Below are positions 5,511 to 64,000 of a stretch of DNA of 64,000 nucleotides, piece by piece. How positions within the stretch are numbered: the first letter of the stretch is position 1; each line of letters begins with the position of its first letter. The stretch covers positions 27,962,001 through 28,026,000 of the forward strand of contig OZ076421.1 of the NCBI GenBank assembly GCA_964187785.1, read 5' to 3'. Under the pieces are notes generated by a model, which was given only the letters and a program-made list of their open reading frames with translations, was not told where the DNA came from and made no database searches. A program made the translations under genes and the position numbers. This DNA comes from Amphiscolops sp. MND2022. Its lineage: Eukaryota.

Positions 5511-6545
5511 TTTGTTTTTAATTAACATTTGAAAGAGGTTGCAGTTGAATTACTTGGGATAGATCTCTTGTCAACTCAAGTGTATGATATTTTCTCAATT
5601 TCTCCTGACGATTCCGCATTTGTTTGAGAAATAAACTTTTTAAGGCTAATTCTAACTGCGGAATAGGAGAAACTCAAATAATACTCTTCCATGTCGTTTA
5701 CAGCTTTCATTCGCACATTACATAGCTTTTTTCACGCTCTTGTTAAGGGGCTGTGAAGTGTCTTGGGGTTTTACGAATAAGTTTTAAGTCTCAGTTTGAA
5801 TCTTGTTAATTCTTCCCTAATTTTGTTTCCTAAGTATTACAATTCCGATGAGTGAAACCTTTCGGTTCCGATTTCGATGTTCACATAGCACGCATCGTTT
5901 GCTTATCTAATTTATTGGTAATTAGATTTCAAGACGCTTTTCTGTTAGCGCTAAGATTGAAATTGGGTGGCAATAGTCATTAATGAAACTAATTCCTTCA
6001 TGGAATGATACTAAACCTACAGTGATACAACGACACAATCCACAAAATAATATAGAATGCGGAATGAAATACTAAATAATGAAGAGAATTTTAGTTACCA
6101 AGTTCTATTTTTTCACCAGATGAAAAGCCTCTTAAGTACACGATAGTTTTACTCTTGTTTATAGTAATCTTGTTACGGACTGGGGCAGAGAGCGATTCGC
6201 TACTCACCTAATTCAATTTTTCAAACTCGCACAAATCTCGGCTATGAATTTTATTTCTTTTTAATCAGCTAGTATTTTTGCGGGAGTGTAAACGGAACAC
6301 TACTTCGTCTCGTTCATTTCTCTGAAATTTAAGCTTGAAATTCAAACGTAATATTCGAATGCAAAATTATACCCTTTCATAAAAAGTAGTAGAACGACCG
6401 GTACTATATTGTTATGATTAGAATTTATATTGTAATGGTTAGAATTTTTATATGAAGAGCTTAAATTTTGAGCAAACAAAAGTAGTGAAAATTGTTTTCA
6501 ACTTCCAGCGGTTTTGTTCCGGCGATTCAAATTTATCAGCACAAT

Positions 6546-6951
6546 TAGAGTTGTACCGAACATCAAGTCCGGTCCGGTATCCGGCCGGATTTCAGGAAAA
6601 TGTCCTGTCCGGTACCCGGCCGGACTTTTTACAACGTCCGGACGGATATTATCTTGAAATCATAATATTAAATTATCGGAATATCTAACTTAGAAAAAGT
6701 GTATGTGCATGGAAAAATTGAATTTGTGACTGTGAATCAAAATTCATTAAATTATGGCGGAGGAAAAAAAGTTTTTCACCGGTCTGTGGTAAAAGCCTGC
6801 TTCGTTTTTCGTAATCCTCATTGCCCAATCGTGAATACAGCCCTTCATCGCTTCAGTGGAAGATAATGTCCGGTCCGGCCGGTATCTGGCTTCAATCAGT
6901 CCTGTCCCGTTGTCCGACCGCACGGAAATTTTCCTGTCCGGTGCACCTCTA
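6546..6951. mobile_element. hAT-type MITE (406 bp)
   Basis: TIRs TAGAGTTGTACCGAACA and revcomp TAGAGGTGCACCGGACA; perfect 8-bp TSD AGCACAAT (6538-6545, 6952-6959); internal CCGG-rich subterminal repeats. Confidence 0.85.
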
Positions 6952-7011
6952 AGCACAATAAAAGAATACAAGTCCATAACCGATTGGAGCATTAACTTTC
7001 AGAATCTTCGA

Positions 7012-10000
7012 ATGGCAACTAGGCGGCAGCCTTTGCAACATTTGGATACCAATAGGGAAAACATTGATGCTGCCGAAGCTCCACGAGGACGGTCAAAACA
7101 AAAGAGTACCCTTGCCATTCGACATAGAAAAGCACTCAGAACTTTGATGCAAAATGACTTTGAAAGAGGATTATCTCCACATGCAAATTCTTCAATATCC
7201 GAAGACCAAGAAAATTATCATGCACAGAAGCATCGATCAGTGAAACAAAAAAAGACAAAGTTGACTACTCGCCGTCGACCTGAATTGGGTCTAGAATATG
7301 TTGATGATACTATGTCTTATTTTCTTTCGATCGAAGGCAACTTTTTGGTTCCTCGGGACTTTCTAGACAACCGAAAAATTAATATTTACCTTCGATGCGA
7401 TTTGGTTGACAAAATGATTTCGCTCCATCGAACATTGTATTACTGTGATGACGTGTTGCATTTGTGGATCAACATTGTAGATAGATTTCTGTATCGTCGA
7501 CCTGATTTGAAACCGGAGTGTTTAAACCTCGTTGGTACGGCTGCTTTAGATCTTAGTACCAGAGTTGAAGGAATAGGTTGCATCATGTTTCTTACTTCCC
7601 ATAATGCTTTGAATTTTTATTTTCCGTCTCCTTATTTCCACATGGGAAAGGAAAATTGCTAACCGAGCCGCGTTTTTCCCCAAAATTTGCCGGATTCCAA
7701 TGTCGTGTTTTTTCGAAAATTGTCCAGCTTTCGAATTTTTTCATTTGTTAGGCTTTTTATGCATTTTTGTACAGTTTTCATGGGTTTTCGTGCGTTTTTG
7801 TGGGGTAGAAAATCCAAAATGTTTCAAGGCGAAGGGAACAGCTTTTCAGGATGCTTTTTTGAAGAGAAAACCGAGAAGTTTGGTCTCAAAACAATCTTGA
7901 AATACCAAAAAATTAAAAACATTCAGATTTTAACTTGCTATTTTTGTAAAGTTTTCGAGAATTTTCGTCGGTTAGAATATTCTAGAACGGAAGAACCAGC
8001 AATTCAAAACGCTTTTTTGAAGGGAAGTCTGAAAAGTTTTCTTATTATGAGGTGCTCCCTTCTCACTCATCTTAAACTTGATGAAAATGAAATTACAAGT
8101 TAGAAAATAGTGTGAGCTCCAGGTAGCTTTTGTTTCATTTTGAGACTAACCGTTGCCTATTTTCCTTGTCACAAAGAATGAGAGACAGCATTGTAGCAGC
8201 TTATTGTTGCCTCGTGGAAGAAGAAATTTAACACATCTACTTTTCCCGTTCCCAGTAAGCGTGTCGAGAACTGATTTTTTTCACTTCGAAACTTTACAGA
8301 TATTGGAGCTGTATTTTAAAAATTTAAAAGTTCTGGAAGGCTACTTATGAGATACATGTTGGTGAAAAACGTTTTCATTGATTTTGATGTTTCCGGTCAG
8401 GTCTCTAAACTGAGGATAGATGTTGACAGTGAGTTTCATGCCTCGTGGAACCATGCTTAACATGCTTGACCAAAATCAAAACTTCCCATTTTTCATTTCT
8501 ATCAGTGTGGAACGTCTTTAAACCCCGGATCGTAATAACATTCCGAAAAACTATGTAGTTAATTGAGGCTATAGAATGCTCTTGAGAAAGAAACATGATT
8601 TGATAGACATATTTCGCTCTGACAGAGAAGACATTGAGGAATCATTCGGTGAGTTTAGCAAAGCTGACCGTATTCAAATGGAGAATGTCATCCTGTCAAC
8701 TTTGGACTTCCAGATTCTGACACCCCAAAGTCTCTGGTTTTTACTGAGGCTCTTGGAATTTGGACAAGCTCCATCCGAGGCTCAAATGATTGCGAGATAC
8801 ATCCATGAGTTGGTTATTGCCCAAAAACCATTGAATGTTACCGAAAGGTAGTGATATCCAGATAATTGAAAAATATCATCGTGTTGCTATTTTCTACCCC
8901 CACAAATTTATTTGTGATTGGGGGAGGAGAATCATAATCTGTGTTGCGTTTTTTAGCAATTCTGCCAAATCTGCACGATCTTCCATCCACTTCAGTTAGT
9001 ACCTAATTTAGTTTGGCTCAGTTGGTAGTGCATTAGAGTGCATTGGCAAGCTAAATTTGCTCAAAGCACAATTTTGTGCTTTCAATACCTCGGATTCCAC
9101 GACCATACCTTTAACCGTGCGAAATTGGCAAATTACGTCATGAATCCCGGATTCCACGGATTTTGTCGTGGATCCCAGTAACAAATGCTTTGCTGTACGC
9201 ACTGTCGGCATGCCGCTTTGTCCCGGACTCCACAAAAACGCAAGTTTTGCAAAACGAACCAATCAGATTGCAGAAATCATAAATTTCCTGGATTCCACGA
9301 CTTTATGCTTGACGCGATACGCGGCATCTCTTCTTGAATTAAATTCAAGTGGAAGACTGAACACTTATAAAATTATGCACTACTTTTCGTATATTAATTC
9401 AAAATGATTCAGACTAACACAAAAATATTACACAAATATTCGTATTTTGTCAAAGTGTCACGTTTCTAATTAGTTAGCGTTCTTGGAGGCCTGCATTTTG
9501 TCCTCACGAAAGATATTTCGGGCATATTTTGTCTATCTGACTTCTAATAGCAACGAAATTCGGCTAAAAAGGTAACATCAAAGGGAAATTTTGTCCTGGA
9601 TTCCACGACTTTTCTCAATTTCGTGTCCTGGATTCCACGACAAGCAGCAAACTAGCTTGCCTATGCACTGTAATGTGCGTCTGCCTGGCAGACACGAGGT
9701 TGTGGGTTCGAACCCGTGCTGATGCGTTTTATTTTTAGCGGAAATATCCCGGTACTTAGCGAGCGTCTTGTTACCATTTAAATCCTAAACATCAAACCGG
9801 CTGTCCATTTTTGGAATACCTTTGCAAGTTTCTCCGATTGTGTGAAAAAGAGCCCTCTCAGAAACATGATTTCTTAAAGTGAACTGAATAAAAACAGACT
9901 TCGTGAAAGTGTTCAAATTAGTTATGTCATGAAAACTGTTTTGTTGTGAATTATATTTTACGAGAAGAATTTGTGAAAAACCTTACAGTAAATTTGACGA

Positions 10001-10290
10001 AAAGTTTTTAAATGGACATCACTGCCGAAAGGCCTTCGAAATTTGCGGCTTCTGTGCTTTTTCTTGCTTTGAAAATCACGGATGCTAGTTGGCCTTGGGA
10101 TAACACTTTGCAACAATATTCAACGTATAGCAGAGACTCCTTGCTTGACCTCTGCGTTGAATTGAAGAACCTAGTAGCTCTTCGCAGATCTCAGAAAGCA
10201 ACGTATTCCAAGTTTTGCAGCTTGAAGTTCAACAGAATTGCGAGATCGCCGAAGTTCAAGGATTTCGATATTGTAGTACTAAGATGGTAA
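7012..10290 (+). CDS. Divergent B-type (mitotic) cyclin, 3 exons: 7012-7576, 8607-8847, 10032-10290 (354 aa)
   Basis: N-terminal D-box RQPLQHLDTN; cyclin-box N (EYVDD..YFLSIE, LRCDLVDK, NIVDRFL, LNLVGTAAL, QMENVILSTLDF); cyclin C-terminal fold (ARYIHEL, PSKFAASVLFLAL, LQQYSTYSRDSL, YSKF). Splice phases are 1/1 and 2/2 and the total of 1065 nt is divisible by 3. The intron 1 boundaries are less certain. Confidence 0.85.
9011..9725 (+). mobile_element. tRNA-derived SINE-like sequence split by a Tc1-type MITE
   Basis: A-box-like TGGCTCAGTTGGTAG (9014-9028) lies left of the MITE; an anticodon-arm-like GTCTGCCTGGCAGAC and B-box GGTTCGAACCC (9705-9715) lie to its right. Confidence 0.6.
9036..9670. 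mobile_element. Tc1/mariner-type MITE
   Basis: TIRs GAGTGCATTGGCAAGCTA and revcomp CAGTGCATAGGCAAGCTA; TA at both flanks (9034-35, 9671-72); the internal motif GGATTCCACG occurs five times. Confidence 0.8.
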
Positions 10291-11174
10291 TTGCATGTTG
10301 TCTGAACGGTGATTTATCAGTGCAAATATTTGGATTTTGTTTTTTTTTTAAATCCAATGCTTTGAATTTACATGTGAATCAATATTTTGGGTAGTGCTGT
10401 TTTTAATGATTATTGTTTATAAAGTTGTTTCTTGTTTCTATTCTTTTGTAAATTTTATAAATTGATAAACGTACAAATAGTTTTATTTTCAGAAGGGACA
10501 TTATTAGGCCTGATTGAATTTGAGATTTTATTCAATACTTCCATGCATTGTAGTTTTTGAAATATTTGACGAGTTCAAAATACATTTTCCGTCAGTTACA
10601 TTTTCCAATTTTTTTGAAATTTTCATTGTGGCGGAAATAACTCAGGGTGTGCTTCTGAAAATGGCGAGAAAATCAAATATGTTTGTGTTTTAAATAAATT
10701 TGTAATGTATAAAAAATCTTAAGTTGAAATAAAGCTATAATCCTTGATGAATACCGATCAGTTATTTCTGACTTTTTATCTGTCACATCTATAATAACTT
10801 TTCCGTTTTGAAAAATTAGATTGATTTTCGTTATAACTGGAAATGCTTGTCGACTAGTTCGAAAAATAATGTAAGTTTTGTTGACTGTACATAGATAAAC
10901 ATGGCAGCATCTTCATTTTAGCTTTGTAATTCTCTAATTGTAAATTCAGATGTTGAATCTTGTGTGTTTATTATTCGCTAATTTGTTGAATAATTTCTGA
11001 ATTATTGAAACGTGTAAATCAACTTTACATGTAGATAAGTTTTCGTATAGATAAGTTTTGTCACTTTATACAAAGAGGTTGAAATTTTTTGTATCGCATG
11101 TTGAAAAAATTCTCTCAATTTGGTTTAAGACACAATTATTTTGAGGAAAAAATTCAGAATGCAATTATTAAACC

Positions 11175-41000: not shown

Positions 41001-44000
41001 TACCAAGTAACTAACTTGCAAACCCTTCAACCTGCTAGTCTCAGCTTGATCCACGATTGATCGTCATTCCCCGGTTAGCTCTTTCCATTTTACAACTTAA
41101 AGGCATTTCGTTTTTTCGAAGGTGAAAAAACTGTGGATCCCCCTGATAGTTTGTCCTTTATTATTACTTCCTAAAATTTTGGATACCGATAGTCACATTT
41201 TTACGAAGTCTCTGATCGACCTTCAGCTTACCCCTAGCAAACCGAAAACTTCACTCATGATAATTGTTACCGGTGCAAGTTCACTAAAACGAGCTTTACA
41301 AAACTTGGATTTTGATAACCGAAATCCCCTTGGGAACTCTATCACAGCCATTCCTTCTTTGAGCTTGAACCCCTATGTTCAAAGTGATACGCTCAAATTG
41401 TCTTTACTACTGGATCATGGTATTCCTAAAAATACGAATCAATTAGTTATTTGGCATGACATTCTGAACAACTCCTTGACTCCCCATAAATCAAATAACA
41501 ATACAGCTCTTACCCCTAAAGAATTAGCAACTGAATTATTAAAATATAAATCACGTATAACAGCCTTAGTCTATTGTGAACGTATTGGTGCACCCCATGC
41601 ATTTGATGATCTTCGTGATCAAGATTTCATTGTTATTCGAGTCACAGAAAATCTTCTTTCTCGTAGAAAACAATGATATTCCTCTTTTGAATGAATATTC
41701 CCGACTTCATCCAGTAGCGGATATTGAATTAAAGTCTTTGTTCATTGTTTTGGAGCACCGAAACAATCTTAAAGCTTTATCCCAAAATACAAGAAGTCCC
41801 AGCAAGAAACCTTCTCAAAGGAAAAGAAGATTGAAGAAGCTTTTAGCAGAGTTTGAAGTCAACTTAACGTTAGAAGTTTTTTATTTCATCCTGTGAGTTG
41901 AGTTCGGTGTGGTCACTGGACGATTAGCTCATCGGTGGCCTATCCGACTCGACTTTGAGGATTATTTACTTTGTTTATTGTTCGTGATAGTGTTGTATTG
42001 TAATCTGAAAAATGTCTGTAACTGAAAGTAGTGCTTCCGTACAACCAGCCACTGAAGATAGAAAACTTACTCGCATCCGAGGTGGTCACAAAGGTGCTTT
42101 CACTAGATTGGAACAGAAAGTTGATGAATTTACGGTCACTGCTATTGACTCTTCAACTAAATTGTTTCAAGTTGAAGCTTTGCTGAAGACATTACAAGAT
42201 AGAATTGCAATGATTCACAAGTTTGATGCGGAAATTGAATTATTGATAGAAGATGAAGATGATTTAGCCAATGAACTAGAACAGCAAACGGAGTTTCATG
42301 TTTCTGCTAGTGTTACCATCGCTAGATTGTCTGCATTGATTGAGAATTACAAAAAAGAACGCGATAGACCTCCCCGTGAGTTTTCAACAGACTCTTCTCC
42401 ATCAAGCTCTGCCGCATCGAGTAGATTGAAGTTGCCTAAACTTCAGTTACCAACATTCACTGGATCATACACTGACTGGATGAGTTTCTTTGACCTATTC
42501 AAGGCCTCCGTCGTTTCTAATACGCATCTCTCCAATTCAGAGAAACTGAACTATTTGAAAGCCTGTGTGAAGGGTGAAGCAGCGAGACTCATTAGTTCAA
42601 TCTCGATAACTGACGCAAACTATAATATTGCCTTTGCATTGTTGAAAGATCGATATGAAAATAAAAGGAGCATCATTCAAGCTCATTTGGAAGCAATTTG
42701 GTCGCAGCCGGTTTTGAAAACTGAATCCGCTCTTGGATTGAGGAAACTTCTGGAACTCACCAATGAGCATTTACGAGCACTCGTTGAATTTGGTCAACCA
42801 GTAGAACACTGGAATGCAATCTTAGTTTTTGTTCTGACGGACAAGATGGATCCAGAGTCACGTAAGCAGTGGCAGCTGGATAATCCTGGCACTGACGTTT
42901 TGTCTTGGGAATTATTGTCAAGATTCCTTGACACAAGAAGCCGTGCACTCGAATCGGGTGGCCCAAAGGTCACACCGCAACCAAGTGTGACTCCTCCCTG
43001 TAACCAAGGAAATCAAACTCTGACCAAAAGGGTTCAGAATTATGCTGTTCAAGGCTCATCGTGCGAATCTTGCCAGGAGGATCATCGCCTTTACGTTTGT
43101 TCACAAATCAAAGGAACGTGTCTTGCTGATAGACATAAGTTCATAAAAGACAAAAAGCTCTGTTTCAACTGCTTCTAATCAGGACACCGTCTAATGCGTG
43201 CCGATCTAATTCACTTGTCGTGAGTGCAAAATGAAACATCACACCTTGCTTCATCGACCTCAGAAACAGCTCCCTGATCAGCGCACCTCTACAAAGACTT
43301 ATTCAAGTATGAATTCAACTTCCAACAAAATGGGAGTCTACAAAACAATTCACCACAGGGCACTTTAGTGCTGACAATGAAATTAATACTGTTCTTCTTT
43401 CTACATCTCTTGTAACAGTTCGGAATTCATCGGGAGACGCGATCAAGCTGCGGGCTCTCTTAGATTCCGGTTCACAAGCCAGTTTCGTAACAGAAGATGT
43501 TGCAAAGGCGCTCATGCTGCCAACTCAGCGCAGCCAAATGTTTCTACAATGGGTTCTTCCCATTTCCAAAAAACTCGAGGCTTATTGCCTGTGAAGTTGA
43601 ATGATACCATCGGAGTTAATCTTCATCTCATACCAAAAATCTCCAATACCATTCCTGATAAAGAAATTGACGTTTCGACCATGCGCCATGTGAACAATCT
43701 TAACTTAGCTGATCCCACTTTTAACGTTCCCAATAAGGTTGATCTCTTGCTAGGTGCAGATGTTATAGAAGACATTATGCTTGATAATAAAATAAAGGAC
43801 AACGGCTTGTGCATTCGGGATTCCGTATTCGGTTGGGTTGTGTCTGGTCCTGTGTATTCGTCTGGCAGCAACAACGTTGTGTCCCACATGACTACCACTC
43901 CGAATTGTGACTCTGACCAACTCCTTTCGAAATTTTGGGAAATAGAAAGTGTCCCCGAAACTAGACACTTAACTTTGGATGAGCGTCGTTGTGAAGAGCA

Positions 44001-47000
44001 CTTCGATAGCACTACAAAACGCAATGGAGACGGCTGTTTCGTAGTACAGATGCCATTTAAAGATGGACCCCACAATTTAGGTCTTTCAAAAGCGAACGCA
44101 ATGAAGCGTTTCATTCGTCTCGAATACACTTTGCGCCATAATGTCGACCTTTTTCGAAAGTATTCAGCTTTCATTCAAGAATTCATTGACCTTGGACACT
44201 TGGACACTTGGAGAAGGTCCAACCCGGGGAGATTAATAATTCTCCAAACTTCTACTTGCCTCATCATTGCGTGCTGAAAGAAGATAGTACAACCACCAAG
44301 TTGCGTGTTGTATTTGACGCTAGTGCTAAAACGACAACTGGTTTTTCACTTGATGATTGTTTGCTAGTTGGTCCCAAACTTCAAGATGATTTGTTCAATA
44401 TTCTCGTACGATTCCGTTTCTTCAAGATTGCTTTATCAGCTGATGTAGCGAAGATGTATCGGCAAGTTGAGCTGGATAAAGCCGATCGAGACTTTCATCG
44501 GATCCTCTGGAGATTTACAGCTGATGGTCCGGTTGAAACCTTACGCATGACCCGAGTTACATATGGCGTAGCTTCCTCATCGTATCAATCAATCCGATCT
44601 TTGCGAGAATGTGCCAATTTGTCAGAAGTATCCACTGAGGTTCAAAGAGCTATATTGAGAGATTTTTATGTTGATGACATTCTCACTGGCGCCAATTCGA
44701 TCGATGAAGCTCGAATACTCCAAAAGCAATTAGTAGAAACTCTTAAACGAGGAAGATTCGATCTCCGCAAGTGGACTTCGAACGAATCAAGCATTATCTT
44801 AGACCTTCCGCCCGAGTATCGCGAAGCAAATGATAACTTGGAGTTTTTAGACAAAGACCATACAATAAAAACGCTCGGTATTGTTTGGCAACACAGCGAA
44901 GATCGCTTCGTTTTTAAGGTTTCCCACATCGAAAAGGAAAACTTTAAAGCAAAGGTTTTGACCAAAAGACAAATGCTCAGTGACATTTCAAAGACTTTCG
45001 ACCCATTGGGTTGGTTGTCACCAGTTACCATTTTCTTGAAACAGTTAATGCAAAGGGCTTGGGAAGCAAAAATTTCATGGGATGATCACCTCCCTTCCGA
45101 ACTTGCCGACCGATATTTGAAGTGGAGAACGAAATTGATCTCTTTAAAGGATGTGGAATTGCAACGATTCGTATTACTTGATGGATTTTCGAACAAGATT
45201 GAGTTGCATCTCTTCTGTGATGCATCAGAAAGGGCTTTTGCCGCTTGTATTCATATTGTTGCCACAGATTCCCATGGCAGGCGGAAGTCATCCCTGCTTG
45301 TTGCCAACACCAAGGTAGCCCCCGTGAAAACACAATCTGTTCCGAGATTAGAATTATGTGCTGCTTTGCTAGGCACTAGGTTATATCAATCTGTCATCAA
45401 GTCTATTGGTCAAACGCCAGTTGTTACTGAAGAAACCTTCGCGTGGACTGATTCAACAATAGTTTTGTGTTGGTTGTCAAAAGAACCATCTTGCTGGTCA
45501 ACTTTTATTTCAAACAGAATTAGTGAAAATCAAAGTGAAAACAAATTGAATTGGAATCATGTGTGTTCAGAGGAGAACCCTGCGGATCCTGCATCTCGAG
45601 GAATTAACCCTGACGAAATAAACCAACATGACCTATGGTGGAATGGTCCGAAGTGGTTACTAACAGGTGAATTTCCGAAAACATTGTCAATTGTTGAAAC
45701 ATCTGAAGAGTTGATAAAGTCGACTCTAACAACAGGAATTACCAGTCTTCAAACCTCTGTGGCTCACAGGGATACCAAAAAGGATGTTATTGATTTGTCG
45801 AGGTTTAACTCCTTATACAAAGTCCTCCGAATTCTTGCTTACGCTAGACGTTTTATTGACAAACTGAAGAAGAACGTGGTTGTTTTACCAAATTAGATTA
45901 CTGCCCCAGAGTTAACAGAGTCAATCATAATTTTGATTCGCCAAGAACAAAAGAAACGATATTCGGAAGGAATCCGAACTTCTAGAAATTGCACAACAAG
46001 TTAAGCCCAAGAGTCAAATCTGCAAATTATACCCGTTTCTCGATAATGGCATTCTTTGTGTCGGAGGAAGATTAGTACATGCAAAGTTGCCCGAAGAAAG
46101 CAAGTTTCAAAGACTAATTCCTCAAGACAGTCACCTCGCACGTCTAATTGTATTGAATTCTCACCAGCTGACACTCCATGGTGGGACTAGTCAAACAATT
46201 GCTCACAATAGAACTCGTTTCTGAGTTCCCAGTTGTAGAAATTTGGTTCGAAAAATGATAATGAATTGTGTCAATTGTAATCGCTTCAACTCGAAGCCAG
46301 TTTTCCCCTTGATGGGAGATCTTCCAAAGACAAGAGTTGACCCTCCTATAAAAGCCTTTGAGGACGTGGGCCTAGACTTTGCTGGTCCTTTCCTTTGTAG
46401 GAAATCTCCGAATTCTCTTGAGAAATCCTACCTAGCACTTTTTGTGTGCTTTGCCAGTAAAGCAGTTCACCTGGAACTAGTCTCCGATCTTAGTACAGCA
46501 GCATGTATTGCAGCCATTAGAAGATTCGTTTCTCGCAGAGGTTGTCCTAAAAATCTTCATAGTGACAATGGGAAAAATTTAGTTGGTTCGGAGAAAGAAA
46601 TAGCAGACCTGCAAAAGATATTAAGGAATGAACACTGTGACTCCTTGCAGGCTGAAGCAGCAGGCTTGCACATCAAGTGGTTCTTCATCCCTCCAAGAGC
46701 TCCTCACTTTGGTGGCCTATGGGAATCAGCAATCAAGTGTGCAAAGATACATCTCCGAAAAGTTATGGGAAACAAAGTTCTGTCCTTTGAAGAATTATGT
46801 ACTCTACTCTGTCAAATCGAAATGATTTTGAATTCAAGACCAATCTGCCCATTATCAGAAGATCCAAATGATTAGTTTTTCTTAACTCCTGCTCATTTCT
46901 GCTTGGGTGGAAAGTTGGAGAATCTACCCTTGAGCCAAACTACCAATGATTTGAAAAACCCTGACAGTACACATTCACCCACAAGAAGATGGATACAAAT

Positions 47001-58994: not shown

Positions 58995-61900
58995 TGTATT
59001 ACCAACATGAGGCGACATTTGTTATCAAGCGACATTTGTTATTATTTGGTAGAAAGTGACATTTGTTATCAGATTGAAAAAGCGACATTTATCAAATCTT
59101 AAAAGGCGACATTTGTCAACTAAATTAGGTTGATAACTAGAAATGAGGCTTTACTAATTAATCCAACAAGTATCTGACAACTTTTTTTATAAATTGACTC
59201 AGCTATCATTCCGTTTGCATTATACATACAATGAATTGACTTCAGCAACCATTCCGTTTGCATTATACATACAATTTGGTACTATCAAACATGACTCTTT
59301 CCTTTTCTACTTTGACTTTATTTTGATTTCATTGACAAATATTATTGTTAATGCATGAATACTTTAAACTACCCGTGAATCATACTTTTTGTTTTGAATT
59401 GAATTTGACTGATCATCAAATTGCTTTCACCGCAATTCCCAACTTCAAAAAGACAATCAAAGTGATTGTATAAACATATTTTGGTGCCGCGCAATTTTCG
59501 AACCGAGGATCACCCACCCTCCATCGCCGAGGAAGACGTCTCCCCTGTCGAGACACCAAATACTTCTCATCTAAGTTTTCCTTCTTACTATGATTCAAGT
59601 TGTCGGAGCGAGTTCTCTGAAAAGACTTTTTGAATTTTGTCAGTCCAATAAAGTCGACTTGAGAAAGCACATCACTGCAATTTCCGGATTGTCTGTAAAC
59701 CCTTACGCAAAAAGCAATCTGAAAAACATGAAATTTCAGTCCACGCAAGGATACTCACACCACAAAAAACTTCTGATTTGGCACGATATTATTAATAACT
59801 CGCTGAACGCTCACAGAAGCAATAATTTTCGAGCGAACACTGTTTCTAATCTCTGTACAACTCTCTTACAATTGAAAGATCATATAACAGCAATTGTCTA
59901 CTGTCAGCGAGGGGGATTGCCTAATATTTACGAGGAACTTACAAATACTGGAATTTTAGTTTTGCACGTACATAAACATCTCTTATCTCCACGGAAAAAG
60001 AAAAATTGTTCAGTACTGAAGGAATTTGCAAGCCTTCATCCTAGTCGAAGCGTTGAGTTGAACATTCTCATAACACTCTGGCGTTATCAATATCAATTAT
60101 CAGCTCTTTTGAAAACTAGAAGATCTCAAAAGAAAATACCTTCAAAGAAAAATTGCAGAAGTCAGCAAAAGAAAATATATGCAGTTCTCTGACAAGTGAC
60201 AATTGTTTTCCTTTGTGATTGTCTTTCATCTCCTGAGCGTTCTAATGTTCGGAGTTGTTGGGCATATCACATTTACATATATTTGTCTCCATCTTTCTCA
60301 ATGTCTATGAATGTTGATAGTTTGAAGCGCTCGAGGAGGGCTGGTTTTCGTGGCATCTGCACGAAGTATAAGAATGAAGCTGAAAAACTCCTGAGCCAAA
60401 ATGTATTGACGTCTGATCAATTAGTCCGACTTGAACAACTAGCCACACTCCTCGAAAGTAAATTGAATCAGATTACCCCACTTGACCTTCAAATACAAGG
60501 ACACACGGAAATAAACGAGTTAGAAGAAACAATAACGGAAGCTAGCGATGCCAATGACATTTTTTTCTAAACATTGATACTACCCGTCGACGCGTTCGTT
60601 CTGAAAACGCATATGAAAATGTTGGTGGAGGAGAGCCGTCTGCCAGTTCTAGTGGCTCAATGGCAATATCACGTCAAGTAGCCAGTGCCAAATTACCAAA
60701 GTTAAACTTGCCCACTTTCAAGGGTGACTATGAGAACTGGCTTTCGTTTCATGACATGTTCAAAAGCTCTGTTCACGATAACCGCTCGTTAACGGACTCG
60801 CAGCGTCTTCAGTATTTGAAAGCTTCTCTGCAAGGTGATGCAGTCAAACTATCGACCTCTCTTGCAATAACTGATGCTAATTTTTGAACTGCTCTGCAAA
60901 CACTTGAAGAACGCTATGCGAATCCTCGGAGGATAGCCCGAATGCATTTGACGAGTATTTTCGAATATCCGAATGTGAAGTCGGAGAGCTCAAAAGATCT
61001 GCGAAAGTTAATAGAGACAACTGAGCAACATCGCCTTGGTCTGGAGAATCTTGGCCAACCTGTTAATCAATTTGACCTTGTCTTCGTGTATATTGTAAGC
61101 AACAAATTGGACTCTGAAACCAGGAAACAATGGGAATTATCCACTCCTGGCACTGACTTCCAGACTTACCAGCAACTTAAAACCTTCGTTGAGAGCAGGT
61201 GTCAAGCACTTGAAACGGCGGTTGTTAATGTTACTAAACATAAGGACTTCGAAGTAAAGGTTAATCAACGGGATCCGAGATCTTTTACACAGTCTTATGC
61301 TACTCATTGGAAGAAGGATTTATGTTTAGCATTTGATGCCAACGATCACAAGCTATATGGTTTACCAAAGTTTGAAAAAATGTCCCGACAAGAAAAGGTG
61401 AGTTTCATAAAACGAAATAACTTATGTTTCAATTGTTTGCGGGTGGAACATCGACTCGATGCATGTCCCAGTCAGTCAAGCTGCCGTGAGTGCCAAAAAA
61501 GGCATCATACCTTATTGCATCCTCAACTGCGATTGAATCCTAGAGGAAATGAAGTGAACTGTCACTCAGACAAGGCAGCCATGCATTCAAATGTAACAGA
61601 TACACAAACTGTCCTTCCCACAGCTCTTATTCCTGTTCAAGGCAAACTTGGAATCACTCATCTTCGAGCCTTACTAGATTCTGGCTCGCAGACGTCTTTC
61701 ATAACTGAAAGTGCTCATCAATTACTGCAGTTGCCGAAGCAATCATCAAATCTTCTTGTTAATGACCTTGGTGGTCATTCAACAAGCCTCTCTAGGGCGT
61801 TCAGTGACTTCATGATCTTACCCAAACAATTCGACCCCATAAATGTTAAAGGCTTCATACTACCAAAACTTACTCAGAAACTGCCCAGTAGAAAGGTTCA

Positions 61901-64000
61901 GAACTTCAACTGGAGCAAACTTAAAAACATGCAACTGGCCGACCCTTACTTCTCTGAACCCGCACCAGTCGATTTGATCCTAGGAGCAGATGTTTTGGAA
62001 GAACTACTGCTATCTAGCAAAATCAAACTTGGTACAGGTTTGGCTCTCACAGAAACTAAACTTGGATGGGTTGTAAGGGGCGCAGTGCAGGCAAAACATA
62101 GTATTAGCATACAAAGCCTCCACACACTGGACTCCCAACTCCAAAACTTCTGGCGACTCGAAGAAGTCCCTGATATAGCTAATCAGACTGAAGAGGAAAT
62201 GGAATGCGAGAACTTTTTTGACCAAACTACATACCGCGATGAAACTGGTCGCTTCGCTGTAAAACTACCTTTCAAACAGTCCATCGGTTTTCTCGGAAAT
62301 TTTTTCCAAAGTGCTCTTCGTCGCTTTTATGCCTTGGAACTCAAACTAAACATGAATCCGGATCTGAAACAGAGTTACTCTGCTTTTATTAAGGAGTTTC
62401 TTTCACCAGGACATATGGAGGTTATTCCGGACAAGGAAATTGCTATTAGCAACAGAGATTCCTATTGTTTGCCACATCACTGCGTGTTGTCTTTGATGCA
62501 TCTGCTAAAACCTCTTCTGGTGTCTCTTTGAATAAACGACTAATGATCGGGCCAAAGCTACAAAGTGACCTTTTCCATATTGTTTTGAGATTGCGCTTAC
62601 ACGCTGTTGCGTTTAGCGCCGATATAGCGAAAATGTACCGACAAGTGGCTCTTGACAAATCAGACCGGGATTACCACAGACTGTTATGGCGTGAAGAGAC
62701 CAATGAACCGGTGCAGCACTTGCGCATGACTCGAGTCACTGATGGGGTTGCGTCCTCTTCTCATCATTCGATCAAATGTCTCATAGTTCTAGCTAAAACA
62801 GCTTCGCCCGAAGTTCGGAGAATCATAGAAAGAGACATGTATGTGGATGATCTACTGTCAGGGGCAGATTCGATTGAAAGGGCACTCGTAATACATACCG
62901 AGTTGATCGAATTGTTGCAATCCGCAGGCTTCCAGTTGCGAAAGTGGACTTCAAATAACTTAGACCTCATTAAAGCACTTCCCCCAGACTACCGTGAAAG
63001 TAAAGACGAATTAGTCTTTGCGGCCGAATCATATCAAATCAAAGCTTTGGGCATCTCGTGGCAACCTGTCCCTGATACCTTTCACTTCAAAATTGATATC
63101 AACAAAACATCCGAGGCAAAAACGAAACGCAAGTTCTGTCAGAAATAACTCGGTTATTTGACCCCCTTGGTTGGCTTTCTCCTATTGTTGTTAAATCCAA
63201 GTGTTTCGTTCAAGAAATGTGGAAACGTCATTTAACGTGGGACAAAAAATTTCCCGACACTCTCCTAGTTCAATGGGAACTTCTACAAAAGGATTTGCGA
63301 ACGCTTACGACCTGCCGTATACCGCGAAGACTGGTAACTAAGAATGAACTGGGGCATTCTTTGGAGCTTCATGTCTTCTGTGACGCCTCTGAAAATGCCT
63401 ACGCAGCTGCAGTCTACAGTCGTGTCTTAGTTGACAATGTTTTCCAAACAGCTCTGCTCGCTTCCAAAAGTAGGGTAGCACCGCTGAAACCTTTAACTGT
63501 TCCCCGTCTAGAGCTTTGTGGGGCTCTTTTGGGAGCTGAACTTATCACTTCAGATCAGTGCGCTTTTGCTGACATGCCATATGAAATTTCAATATTCGCT
63601 TGGACTGATTCCACAGTCTTCCTATCTTGGATCTCGCAACCACCGAATACTTGGAAAACATTTGTTCGCAATCGAGTTGCAAAAATAGAAACATTAGTTC
63701 CCAGTGACCGCTGGGGACATGTCAAGGGTGAAAATAACCCTGCCGATTTGCCATCAAGAGGCGTTACTGCTGATGTTCTCTTGGACTCTTCCTTGTGGTG
63801 GAAGGGACCTGAATGGCTGAGAGACGGGTCCTGTGATTTGAATGCACACATTGGCCTTCAATGCTTTCCAAAGGCCCAAAAGATCGAAGAACATCGAACG
63901 CCTGTACTTTCGTTACCCTTAGCTGCGACTGTGCAAAATTCTTCAGTTATTGAAATAATAAATCATTCTCGTTTCCGTAGCTCTAAAAAATTGGTACGCG
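58995..64000 (+). mobile_element. BEL/Pao LTR retrotransposon (disabled gag-pol, runs off window end) with extra 5' ORF
   Basis: Putative LTR ~58995-59476 (TG..CA; start uncertain); PBS TGGTGCCGCG (59482); gag from 60301 (KLPKLNLPTFKGD, CFNCLRVEHRLDAC); protease ALLDSGSQTSF; RT MYVDD (~62838); RNase H FCDASENAY (~63377). Confidence 0.9.
59590..60192 (+). CDS. Intact 200-aa extra ORF ('ORF0') upstream of BEL/Pao gag, SGNH-hydrolase-like motif layout
   Basis: MIQVVGASSLKR..ITAISGLSVNPY..LLIWHDIINNSL..ITAIVYCQRGGLP..LLSPRK..EFASLHP..basic tail; uninterrupted ATG to TGA; homologous to 41257-41896. Confidence 0.75.
   Translation: MIQVVGASSLKRLFEFCQSNKVDLRKHITAISGLSVNPYAKSNLKNMKFQSTQGYSHHKKLLIWHDIINNSLNAHRSNNFRANTVSNLCTTLLQLKDHITAIVYCQRGGLPNIYEELTNTGILVLHVHKHLLSPRKKKNCSVLKEFASLHPSRSVELNILITLWRYQYQLSALLKTRRSQKKIPSKKNCRSQQKKIYAVL

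What the first reader, a model, noticed from the sequence alone, without database searches (positions are those of the whole stretch)
8841..10032. Cyclin intron 2 is a hAT transposon plus one TSD copy: an introner-like intron gain
Seen: CCGAAAGG is duplicated exactly at both junctions (8841-48, 10025-32), and the enclosed 1176 bp has TIRs TAGTGATATCCA/CAGTGATGTCCA. The donor AG|GT is formed by the last G of the left TSD plus the T that starts the left TIR (the right TIR has C there, which would give GC). The acceptor AG comes from the right TSD. Splicing 8848-10031 removes exactly the element plus one TSD and restores ..NVTERPSKFAAS.., collinear with cyclin box C. The acceptor has no polypyrimidine tract. 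Established: 8-bp TSDs and (C/T)AG-starting TIRs typify hAT elements, and TSD-supplied splice sites are the known introner mechanism. Inference: a recent, traceable intron gain by a hAT MITE.
Basis: partly seen in the sequence, partly recalled or inferred. Interest (0 to 1): 0.8.

Follow-up and report, generated by a model that had tools for sequence, protein, structure and literature searches.

The report
Transposon insertion turned cyclin intron
A small cut-and-paste transposon landed inside the coding sequence of a fast-evolving cyclin gene of an aquatic animal, at a spot where its 8-letter target duplication creates GT and AG splice signals, so it is probably removed as an intron, but it is old rather than recent and no RNA data exist to prove splicing.

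Summary
CCGAAAGG stands at 8841-8848 and 10025-10032. It flanks 12-nt inverted ends, TAGTGATATCCA and CAGTGATGTCCA, which match at 10 of 12. Removing 8848-10031 (GT..AG, 1184 nt) joins ..NVTER|PSKFAAS.. in frame, and the join is collinear with intronless relatives.

Three parts of the interpretation need correcting.
- The 1176 bp is a nest, not one MITE. An outer unit of about 290 bp holds a ~240-bp tRNA-like repeat, which is itself split by a 645-bp TIR element.
- The insertion is not recent. It predates both nested insertions and is present in two individuals and in a haplotype about 2.3% divergent overall.
- It is not an introner family. The outer unit's 252-bp right part has no other copy in the 1.07-Gb genome. 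Only its first 29 nt have a relative, at the end of an old, low-copy MITE on another chromosome. The hAT assignment rests on TSD length and YAGTG ends alone.

Splicing is unproven, because no RNA run was found. Unspliced RNA stops at TAG at 8849. Haplotype differences show purifying selection on the gene overall (P about 0.01), but this comes from exon 1. Verdict: a new member of a known kind, a single transposon-derived intron gain. The scan holds other unchecked "introner-like" notes on this genome.

The parts
7012..7576 (+). Cyclin exon 1 (ATG at 7012). It holds the N-terminal cyclin box. The 3' end is uncertain: 7576 or 7586.
   Evidence: Open frame. Pfam Cyclin_N, E 1.4e-8, residues 100-186.
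7577..8606 (+). Intron 1, boundaries inferred. The alternative is 7587-8625. It carries a 15-nt inverted repeat at 7582-7596 / 8585-8599.
   Evidence: In-frame GT..AG options. Inverted repeat 14/15. Old repeats in the interior only. Absent from the paralogs.
8607..8847 (+). Cyclin exon 2: the end of the first cyclin fold and the start of Cyclin_C.
   Evidence: Open frame. Collinear with P0003, P0004 and P0007.
8841..8848 (+). Left copy of the 8-bp target-site duplication CCGAAAGG. Its last G is the first base of the donor GT.
   Evidence: Identical in haplotype L093.
8848..10031 (+). Putative intron 2, GT..AG, 1184 nt, equal to the element plus one TSD copy. The unspliced reading hits TAG at 8849-8851.
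   Evidence: No RNA evidence.
8849..8884 (+). Left part of the outer TIR element, with the left TIR TAGTGATATCCA at 8849-8860.
   Evidence: Its first 29 nt match the end of a 402-bp MITE on C3 at 26/29.
8885..9030 (+). Left part of a nested ~240-bp tRNA-like (box A / box B-like) repeat. The start is good to about +/-3 nt.
   Evidence: 1530 candidates genome-wide; uninterrupted copies are 84-91% identical. The tRNA model scores 18.6 bits, below the cut-off.
9031..9675 (+). Innermost nested element. It has 23-nt TIRs (CATTAGAGTGCATTGGCAAGCTA) and 7 copies of an 18-nt motif, and it splits the tRNA-like repeat.
   Evidence: 5606 candidates; copies are mostly 92-94% identical (one at 89%). TIR pair I1 and repeat family D1. 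Intact host repeats lack it.
9677..9772 (+). Right part of the nested tRNA-like repeat.
   Evidence: 1945 candidates, 86-95% identical. The boundary comes from the alignment.
9773..10024 (+). Right part of the outer TIR element, with the right TIR at 10013-10024 (reverse complement CAGTGATGTCCA).
   Evidence: No other copy in the 1.07-Gb genome. TIR.
10025..10032 (+). Right copy of the TSD CCGAAAGG. Its AG at 10030-10031 is the acceptor and its last G is the first base of exon 3.
10032..10290 (+). Cyclin exon 3, up to the stop codon at 10288-10290.
   Evidence: Pfam Cyclin_C, E 2.6e-11, profile positions 44-117 of 119. Aligns to the paralogs from PSK onward.

Best explanation
A non-autonomous cut-and-paste element of about 290 bp inserted into the then continuous coding sequence of a lineage-specific cyclin. 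It has hAT-like ends (YAGTGATRTCCA) and made an 8-bp target duplication. The insertion lies between the codons for ..TER and PSK.. in the C-terminal cyclin fold. The duplicated target CCGAAAGG ends in AGG and the element starts with T. The left junction therefore reads AG|GT and the right one AG|G. The spliceosome can then remove exactly the element plus one target copy and restore the reading frame.

Later a tRNA-like repeat inserted into the element, and a 645-bp TIR element inserted into that repeat. This enlarged the intron to 1184 nt.

Shown: the anatomy, the nesting order, the uninterrupted site in relatives, and presence in all haplotypes seen. Inferred: that the segment is actually spliced, and that the element belongs to the hAT superfamily.
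For: - The exact TSD and 10/12 TIR directly abut the frame-restoring GT..AG. Chance expectation is 0.31 such TSD+TIR structures per 64 kb at any position.
- Exon 3 starts at Cyclin_C profile position 44. The spliced product aligns without a gap at the junction to P0003, P0004, P0007 and P0006 (..MK|PSKL....VL|PSKV..).
- The same-genome paralog on C4 is one 351-aa open frame across both intron positions. P0007 is one ORF on a 423-kb genomic contig of another assembly. The DNA is continuous at the site in both.
- Our protein groups with P0003, P0004 and P0007 at 100/100 support.
- The first 29 nt of the element match, at 26/29, the terminus of a 402-bp MITE on C3 with TIRs TAGTGATGTCCAGAT / CATTGATGTCCAGAT. 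The reversed-pattern control gave 0 hits.
- The 15-mer YAKTGATRTCCAGAT occurs 33 times, against 5 for the reversed control.
- hAT-type MITEs with perfect 8-bp TSDs are common here: 8 in 376 kb sampled. PF05699 gives 2215 candidates.
- TSDs, TIRs and both splice junctions are identical in a haplotype 97.7% identical overall.
- Haplotype differences in the coding sequence are 8 synonymous to 7 non-synonymous, plus one in-frame 3-nt deletion. P = 0.012 against the share of synonymous changes assumed under neutrality (0.235; the coding sequence itself gives 0.218).
- All three exons are open.
- The mechanism, with one splice site from the element and the 3' AG from the TSD, is described for introners (PMC11282704).
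Against: - No RNA run of this organism was found, so no junction read exists.
- No spliced full-length product is in the protein collection.
- The unspliced reading stops at once, at TAG 8849.
- The acceptor is AAG with no pyrimidine tract, and the donor GTAGTG lacks +5 G.
- The selection signal comes from exon 1 (5 synonymous, 2 non-synonymous). Exons 2+3 show 3 synonymous to 5 non-synonymous, including W>L, which is indistinguishable from neutral.
- The protein sits on a very long branch, 2.69 against 0.8-1.3 for its relatives.
- The 252-bp right part of the outer unit has no second copy.
- No hAT transposase lies within 10 kb of any TIR 15-mer hit.
- The intronless relatives could be retrocopies, and the protein collection favours intronless genes.
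Confidence: 0.6

Rival explanations
1. The insertion is real but is not spliced, or only poorly. The gene would then be a truncated cyclin ending ..NVTER*, or a decaying pseudogene. The GT and AG at the junctions would be a coincidence of a target that happened to end in AGG.
For: - TAG stands at 8849-8851 directly in frame.
- The splice signals are weak.
- Exons 2+3 show 3 synonymous to 5 non-synonymous differences between haplotypes, P = 0.28 against neutral.
- The branch is very long.
- There is no RNA evidence.
Against: - Exon 3 is still an open 86-codon frame and is as similar to the paralog (37%) as exons 1 and 2 are (40% and 36%). This holds although the insertion is older than two nested repeat insertions whose copies differ by 6-16% from their relatives.
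- Overall the coding sequence is under purifying selection.
- Among 8 hAT-like TSDs sampled, only this exonic one ends in AGG. That is what a filter for spliceable insertions would produce.
Confidence: 0.27
2. New intron by repair of a staggered double-strand break with filler DNA. This is the model proposed for Daphnia intron gains, cited here from my own knowledge. The 8-bp direct repeat would come from repair, not transposition.
For: The interior of the outer unit is unique in the genome, as filler DNA would be. Short direct repeats flank the insert.
Against: - The 10/12 terminal inverted repeat starts with YAGTG.
- 26 of its first 29 nt are shared with the terminus of an independent TIR element.
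- The TIR 15-mer is enriched 33 to 5.
- 8 bp is exactly the TSD length of the many hAT-like MITEs in this genome.
Confidence: 0.06
3. An old, inherited cyclin intron that merely collected transposons. The 8-bp repeat and the inverted ends would be chance.
For: AGG of the repeat is favoured by splice consensus. Most of the intron is younger nested repeats.
Against: - Five further identical letters plus a 10/12 TIR sit exactly at the borders.
- The three nearest relatives with known sequence have no intron here, two of them on genomic contigs.
- The terminus is homologous to another TIR element.
Confidence: 0.03

Closest known systems
Introners / introner elements (Micromonas, Aureococcus, dinoflagellates, fungi, some aquatic animals; PMC9860276, PMC12130899, review PMC11282704)
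   Same: A DNA transposon with TIRs and a TSD forms the whole intron. One splice site comes from the element end (GT) and the 3' AG is co-opted from the TSD, so element plus one TSD is removed and the frame is restored. The host is an aquatic animal.
   Different: Introners are families of near-identical copies that create introns in many genes. Here the outer unit has no second copy and only a distant, old, low-copy relative. The TSD is 8 bp rather than the 3 bp of Micromonas. Splicing is not shown.
Splicing of maize Ac/Ds (hAT) insertions out of exons of wx and adh1 (Wessler and colleagues, late 1980s; cited from my own knowledge, not checked here)
   Same: A hAT-type element with an 8-bp TSD and imperfect C/T-starting TIRs (Ac has CAGGGATGAAA / TAGGGATGAAA) lies in an exon and is removed from the RNA by the spliceosome.
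   Different: Ds splicing mostly uses donor sites inside the element and is imprecise and leaky. Here the geometry allows exact restoration. The insertion is also fixed in all haplotypes seen.
MITE-derived introns of the tunicate Fritillaria borealis (as summarised in PMC11282704)
   Same: An animal lineage in which species-specific introns carry TIRs and TSDs at their borders.
   Different: Those introns are mostly non-canonical (AG-AC, AG-AT) and need an altered spliceosome. This one is GT-AG. Whether this genome tolerates non-GT donors is only suggested by unchecked scan notes.
Intron gains flanked by short direct repeats in Daphnia (double-strand-break repair model; cited from my own knowledge)
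   Same: A new intron of otherwise unique sequence, flanked by a short direct repeat.
   Different: Here hAT-like inverted termini and homology to another TIR element point to transposition.

Membership tests
hAT superfamily, non-autonomous element | 8-bp target-site duplication | tested here: met
   CCGAAAGG is exact on both sides.
hAT superfamily, non-autonomous element | Short TIRs beginning (C/T)A(A/G)NG | tested here: met
   TAGTGATATCCA / CAGTGATGTCCA, 10/12. The motif rule itself comes from general knowledge.
hAT superfamily, non-autonomous element | An autonomous partner with the same termini that encodes a hAT transposase | tested here: inconclusive
   PF05699 is abundant (2215 candidates, 150 scored). 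None of those listed lies within 10 kb of the 33 TIR 15-mer hits. Only a fraction was scored, and no more genome letters could be fetched.
MITE | Small, non-coding, with TIRs and a TSD | tested here: met
   The outer unit is about 290 bp once the two nested repeats are removed.
MITE | Many similar copies in the genome | tested here: not met
   The 252-bp right part has 1 candidate, which is itself. The left 29 nt have one relative. That relative's family has 10 matches at 67-79% identity.
Introner family | Near-identical copies forming introns in multiple unrelated genes | tested here: not met
   There is no second copy of the outer unit.
Introner family | Splice sites supplied by the element end and/or the TSD, so that element plus one TSD is removed | tested here: met
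   G (TSD) + T (TIR) form the donor, AG (TSD) forms the acceptor, and 1184 = 1176 + 8. This is shown at sequence level only.
Spliceosomal intron (functional) | Junction seen in RNA | not testable with these tools
   No RNA run holds the gene. All 5 runs are DNA contigs.
Spliceosomal intron (functional) | GT-AG borders, frame and protein fold restored | tested here: met
Cyclin (A/B-like, two cyclin folds) | Cyclin_N and Cyclin_C domains in order | tested here: met
   Cyclin_N is in exon 1. Cyclin_C positions 44-117 are in exon 3. The protein is collinear with full-length cyclins.

The most novel reading that the evidence does not exclude
This cyclin intron may be one instance of a genome-wide, family-independent route to new introns in an animal. 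Under this reading, any hAT-type insertion into an exon whose 8-bp target ends in AGG is spliceable and can be fixed, so many unrelated hAT MITEs, not one introner family, are creating introns. Both introns of this gene would be transposon-derived. Intron 1 also has a 14/15 inverted repeat a few nt inside both splice sites, and the gene's relatives are intronless. The scan holds about 18 further unchecked 'introner-like' notes for this genome, including GC-AG and GG-AG variants of the same geometry.
Probability: 0.3. Interest if true: 0.75.

Novelty: new member of a known kind. Interest (0 to 1): 0.45.

Why it matters
Traceable intron gains in animals are rare. Systematic surveys found introners in only two animal groups in 2022 (PMC9860276), and in a few more in 2025 (PMC12130899). 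A case where the donor, the acceptor, the TSD, the TIRs and uninterrupted relatives can all still be read gives a concrete example of how a cut-and-paste transposon becomes an intron without a specialised introner family. If the many similar unchecked notes from this genome hold up, this species would be a good animal system for studying ongoing transposon-driven intron gain. As it stands, this is a single old event with unproven splicing, in a fast-evolving orphan cyclin.

Tried and rejected
- RNA evidence: two searches for sequencing runs found only DNA runs. Laying 4 runs showed continuous genomic contigs. Among the joints listed (81 more were not shown) none was an empty site and none the 8847^10032 joint.
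- Empty site in another individual or haplotype: rejected. X5 (second sample) and L093 (ENA assembly, 97.7% identical) both carry the whole nest.
- Other copies of the element: the full 1176 bp returned only the nested repeats. The outer 252 bp returned nothing but itself.
- Link to a hAT transposase by coordinates: none within 10 kb. Some PF05699 hits may be the retrotransposon-borne hAT-like genes noted elsewhere in the scan.
The paralog was recovered through the protein collection instead.
- Orthologues: the word-index search found only the same species. The exhaustive search gave nothing closer than 40% identity. Intron state in true orthologues therefore could not be tested.
- Canonical cyclin B intron positions: P0006 is itself intronless in metagenome contigs and P0008 is not on record. 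The collection is biased toward intronless genes.
- tRNA status of the middle repeat: ARAGORN found none, and Rfam tRNA scored 18.6 bits against a cut-off of 29.
- An 8-bp TSD for the C3 MITE: not recognisable (TCGCCAGG against GCACCGAA).
- Intron 1 as 'element plus TSD': no TSD length gives both a repeat and the right frame, so this is left as an observation.
Full report
**Observation.** The 8-mer CCGAAAGG is present exactly at 8841-8848 and 10025-10032. Directly inside it lie TAGTGATATCCA (8849-8860) and, on the other strand, CAGTGATGTCCA (10013-10024), which match at 10 of 12 positions. The G at 8848 and the T at 8849 make a GT. The AG at 10030-10031 lies in the right repeat copy. Removing 8848-10031 takes out 1184 nt, which equals the 1176-nt insert plus 8, and joins gaa-ag|g-cct to give ..PLNVTER PSKFAAS... 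Read without splicing, the frame stops at once at TAG 8849-8851.

I scanned the window for an exact 8-bp repeat directly flanking a >=10/12 inverted pair at 100-3000 bp. This gave two hits, against a mean of 0.31 in 100 simulated windows. The second hit is another hAT-like MITE just upstream of the same gene. AGG of the repeat is favoured by splice consensus, so about five letters are free.

**The gene.**
- An ATG at 7012 opens a frame with a Cyclin_N match.
- Exon 3 (10032-10290) matches Cyclin_C profile positions 44-117 of 119.
- Exon 2 ends with the residues that would fill positions 1-43.
- Intron 1 has two in-frame GT..AG options, 7577-8606 or 7587-8625. Without RNA I cannot choose between them.
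- The spliced product is 352-355 aa. It aligns across the exon 2 / exon 3 junction without a gap to full-length cyclins, and ER|PSKFAAS lies on the conserved ..K|PSKLAAA.. motif.

**What the insert is.** It is a nest of three elements, not one.
- Window 9031-9675 belongs to a very abundant family with 23-nt TIRs (5606 first-look candidates, copies mostly 92-94% identical, one at 89%).
- That element splits a ~240-bp repeat at 8885-9030 plus 9677-9772. This repeat has box-A/box-B-like, tRNA-resembling sequence (1530-1945 candidates). Intact copies run straight across the split. ARAGORN calls no tRNA, and Rfam's tRNA model scores below its cut-off.
- What remains, 8849-8884 plus 9773-10024 (about 290 bp), is the unit that owns the TIRs and the TSD.

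**Relatives of the outer unit.**
- Its 252-bp right part has no other copy in the 1.07-Gb genome.
- Its first 29 nt match one other place at 26/29. That place is the terminus of a 402-bp element on C3 with its own TIRs, TAGTGATGTCCAGAT / CATTGATGTCCAGAT.
- That element has only 10 matches, at 67-79% identity.
- The 15-mer YAKTGATRTCCAGAT occurs 33 times, against 5 for the reversed control.

The outer unit is therefore a real TIR element of an old, low-copy family. The hAT assignment rests on three things: the 8-bp TSD, the YAGTG ends, and the fact that hAT-like MITEs with perfect 8-bp TSDs are common here (8 in 376 kb sampled; PF05699 candidates 2215). No transposase could be tied to these termini.

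**Was the site once uninterrupted?**
- The nearest relative in the same genome (C4:11759859-11760656, protein P0003, 348 aa) is a single open frame. It is collinear with exons 1, 2 and 3 and has exactly matching spacing at both intron positions.
- P0007, from a different assembly, is a single ORF on a 423-kb genomic contig.
- In a tree of 46 cyclins, our protein, P0003, P0004 and P0007 form a clade with 100/100 support.

Gain of the intron in our gene is therefore the simpler reading. Two caveats apply. The relatives could be retrocopies, and the protein collection recovers mainly intronless genes (P0006 is also intronless).

**Age.** The whole nest, with identical TSDs, TIRs and junctions, is present in the contigs of a second sample (X5). 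It is also present in an independent ENA assembly haplotype (L093) that is 97.7% identical overall and 2.5-3.5% different in the intronic parts. The outer insertion must predate the tRNA-like repeat insertion, whose copies differ by 9-16% from one another. It must also predate the inner element, whose copies mostly differ by 6-8%. 'Recent' is therefore not supported. No empty site was seen.

**Is it spliced?** There is no direct evidence. Both run searches returned DNA only, and no spliced full-length product exists in the protein collection.

Indirect evidence for splicing:
- All three exons are open.
- Exon 3 is as similar to the paralog (37%) as exons 1 and 2 are (40% and 36%).
- Haplotype differences in the coding sequence are 8 synonymous to 7 non-synonymous, plus an in-frame 3-nt deletion. 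P = 0.012 against neutrality, tested with a synonymous share of 0.235 (the coding sequence itself gives 0.218).

Indirect evidence against:
- That signal comes from exon 1 (5 to 2). Exons 2+3 give 3 to 5, including W>L.
- The splice signals are weak: GTAGTG, and AAG without a pyrimidine tract.
- The protein lies on a very long branch.

I put the transposon-into-coding-sequence origin at about 0.9. I put the full statement, including actual splicing, at about 0.6.

**Comparison with the known.** The geometry is that described for introners, where the element end gives the 5' site and the TSD gives the 3' AG (review PMC11282704). Single transposon-derived introns are reported in many eukaryotes (same review). 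Introner families, by contrast, are multi-copy and are rare in animals (PMC9860276; PMC12130899). This element fails the multi-copy criterion, so it works like an introner but is not a member of an introner family. Splicing of the maize hAT element Ds from exons is an older parallel, which I cite from my own knowledge.

**Context from the scan.** All of the following is unchecked. Other notes on this genome list about 18 'introner-like' cases, one of them followed up with the same conclusion and the same lack of RNA. They also list introns with non-GT donors after exonic AG. In this gene, intron 1 too carries a 14/15 inverted repeat 5 and 7 nt inside its putative splice sites, but without a recognisable TSD. 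These points raise the chance that the event is part of a wider process. I did not test that here.

**Verdict.** This is a new member of a known kind and is of moderate interest.

Noticed in passing
window 6538-6959: A separate hAT-like MITE of 406 bp at 6546-6951. Its TSD is AGCACAAT and its TIRs are TAGAGTTGTACC / TAGAGGTGCACC. It ends about 60 nt upstream of the cyclin ATG, so it may form part of the promoter. The same TIR family is seen in L039.
   Followed up: partly
window 7577-8606: Intron 1 of the same gene has a 15-nt inverted repeat (14/15) at 7582-7596 / 8585-8599. This lies 5 nt inside the putative donor and 7 nt inside the putative acceptor. ATAG stands at both exon/intron edges. 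There is no clean TSD. Its ends have no other genomic copy, and its interior (7609-8043) holds old repeats at 67-87% identity. The paralogs lack this intron too.
   Followed up: partly
window 9031-9675: Very abundant TIR element (5606 first-look candidates) with 23-nt TIRs and seven copies of an 18-nt motif, TGTCCTGGATTCCACGAC. Here it is shortened between 9456 and 9573 compared with most copies. It is inserted at a TG inside the box-A-like part of the host repeat.
   Followed up: partly
window 8885-9030 + 9677-9772; L032-L090: A repeat of about 240 bp (1500-1900 candidates). Its tRNA-like segment, with GGCTCAGTTGGTAG and GGTTCGAACCC, lies about 125 nt from the 5' end of the unit rather than at the head as in a classical SINE. 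No TSDs were evident in 15 copies.
   Followed up: partly
L094 3001-4047 (G000 C4:11759859-11760656): An intronless 348-aa cyclin paralog with Cyclin_N and Cyclin_C. Beside it is a 378-aa single-ORF B56 (PP2A regulatory subunit) gene and reverse-transcriptase fragments. The cyclin clade (ours, P0003, P0004, P0007) is well separated from the canonical cyclin B-like sequences.
   Followed up: partly
window 42012-45896 and 60942-63148: BEL/Pao-type retrotransposon reading frames (DUF1759, Peptidase_A17, RVT_1).
   Followed up: no
L092 1628-2029 (G000 C3:64211457-64211858): The 402-bp relative of the outer element also sits behind ..CCAGG|TAGTG. Its left junction therefore reads AG|GT as well. Its flanks do not look coding, and no 8-bp TSD is recognisable.
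   Followed up: partly
window 6900-10800 versus L093 and runs X1-X5: Heterozygosity is high. Haplotypes differ by 2.5-3.5% in introns and 1.1-1.7% in exons, with several indels.
   Followed up: partly
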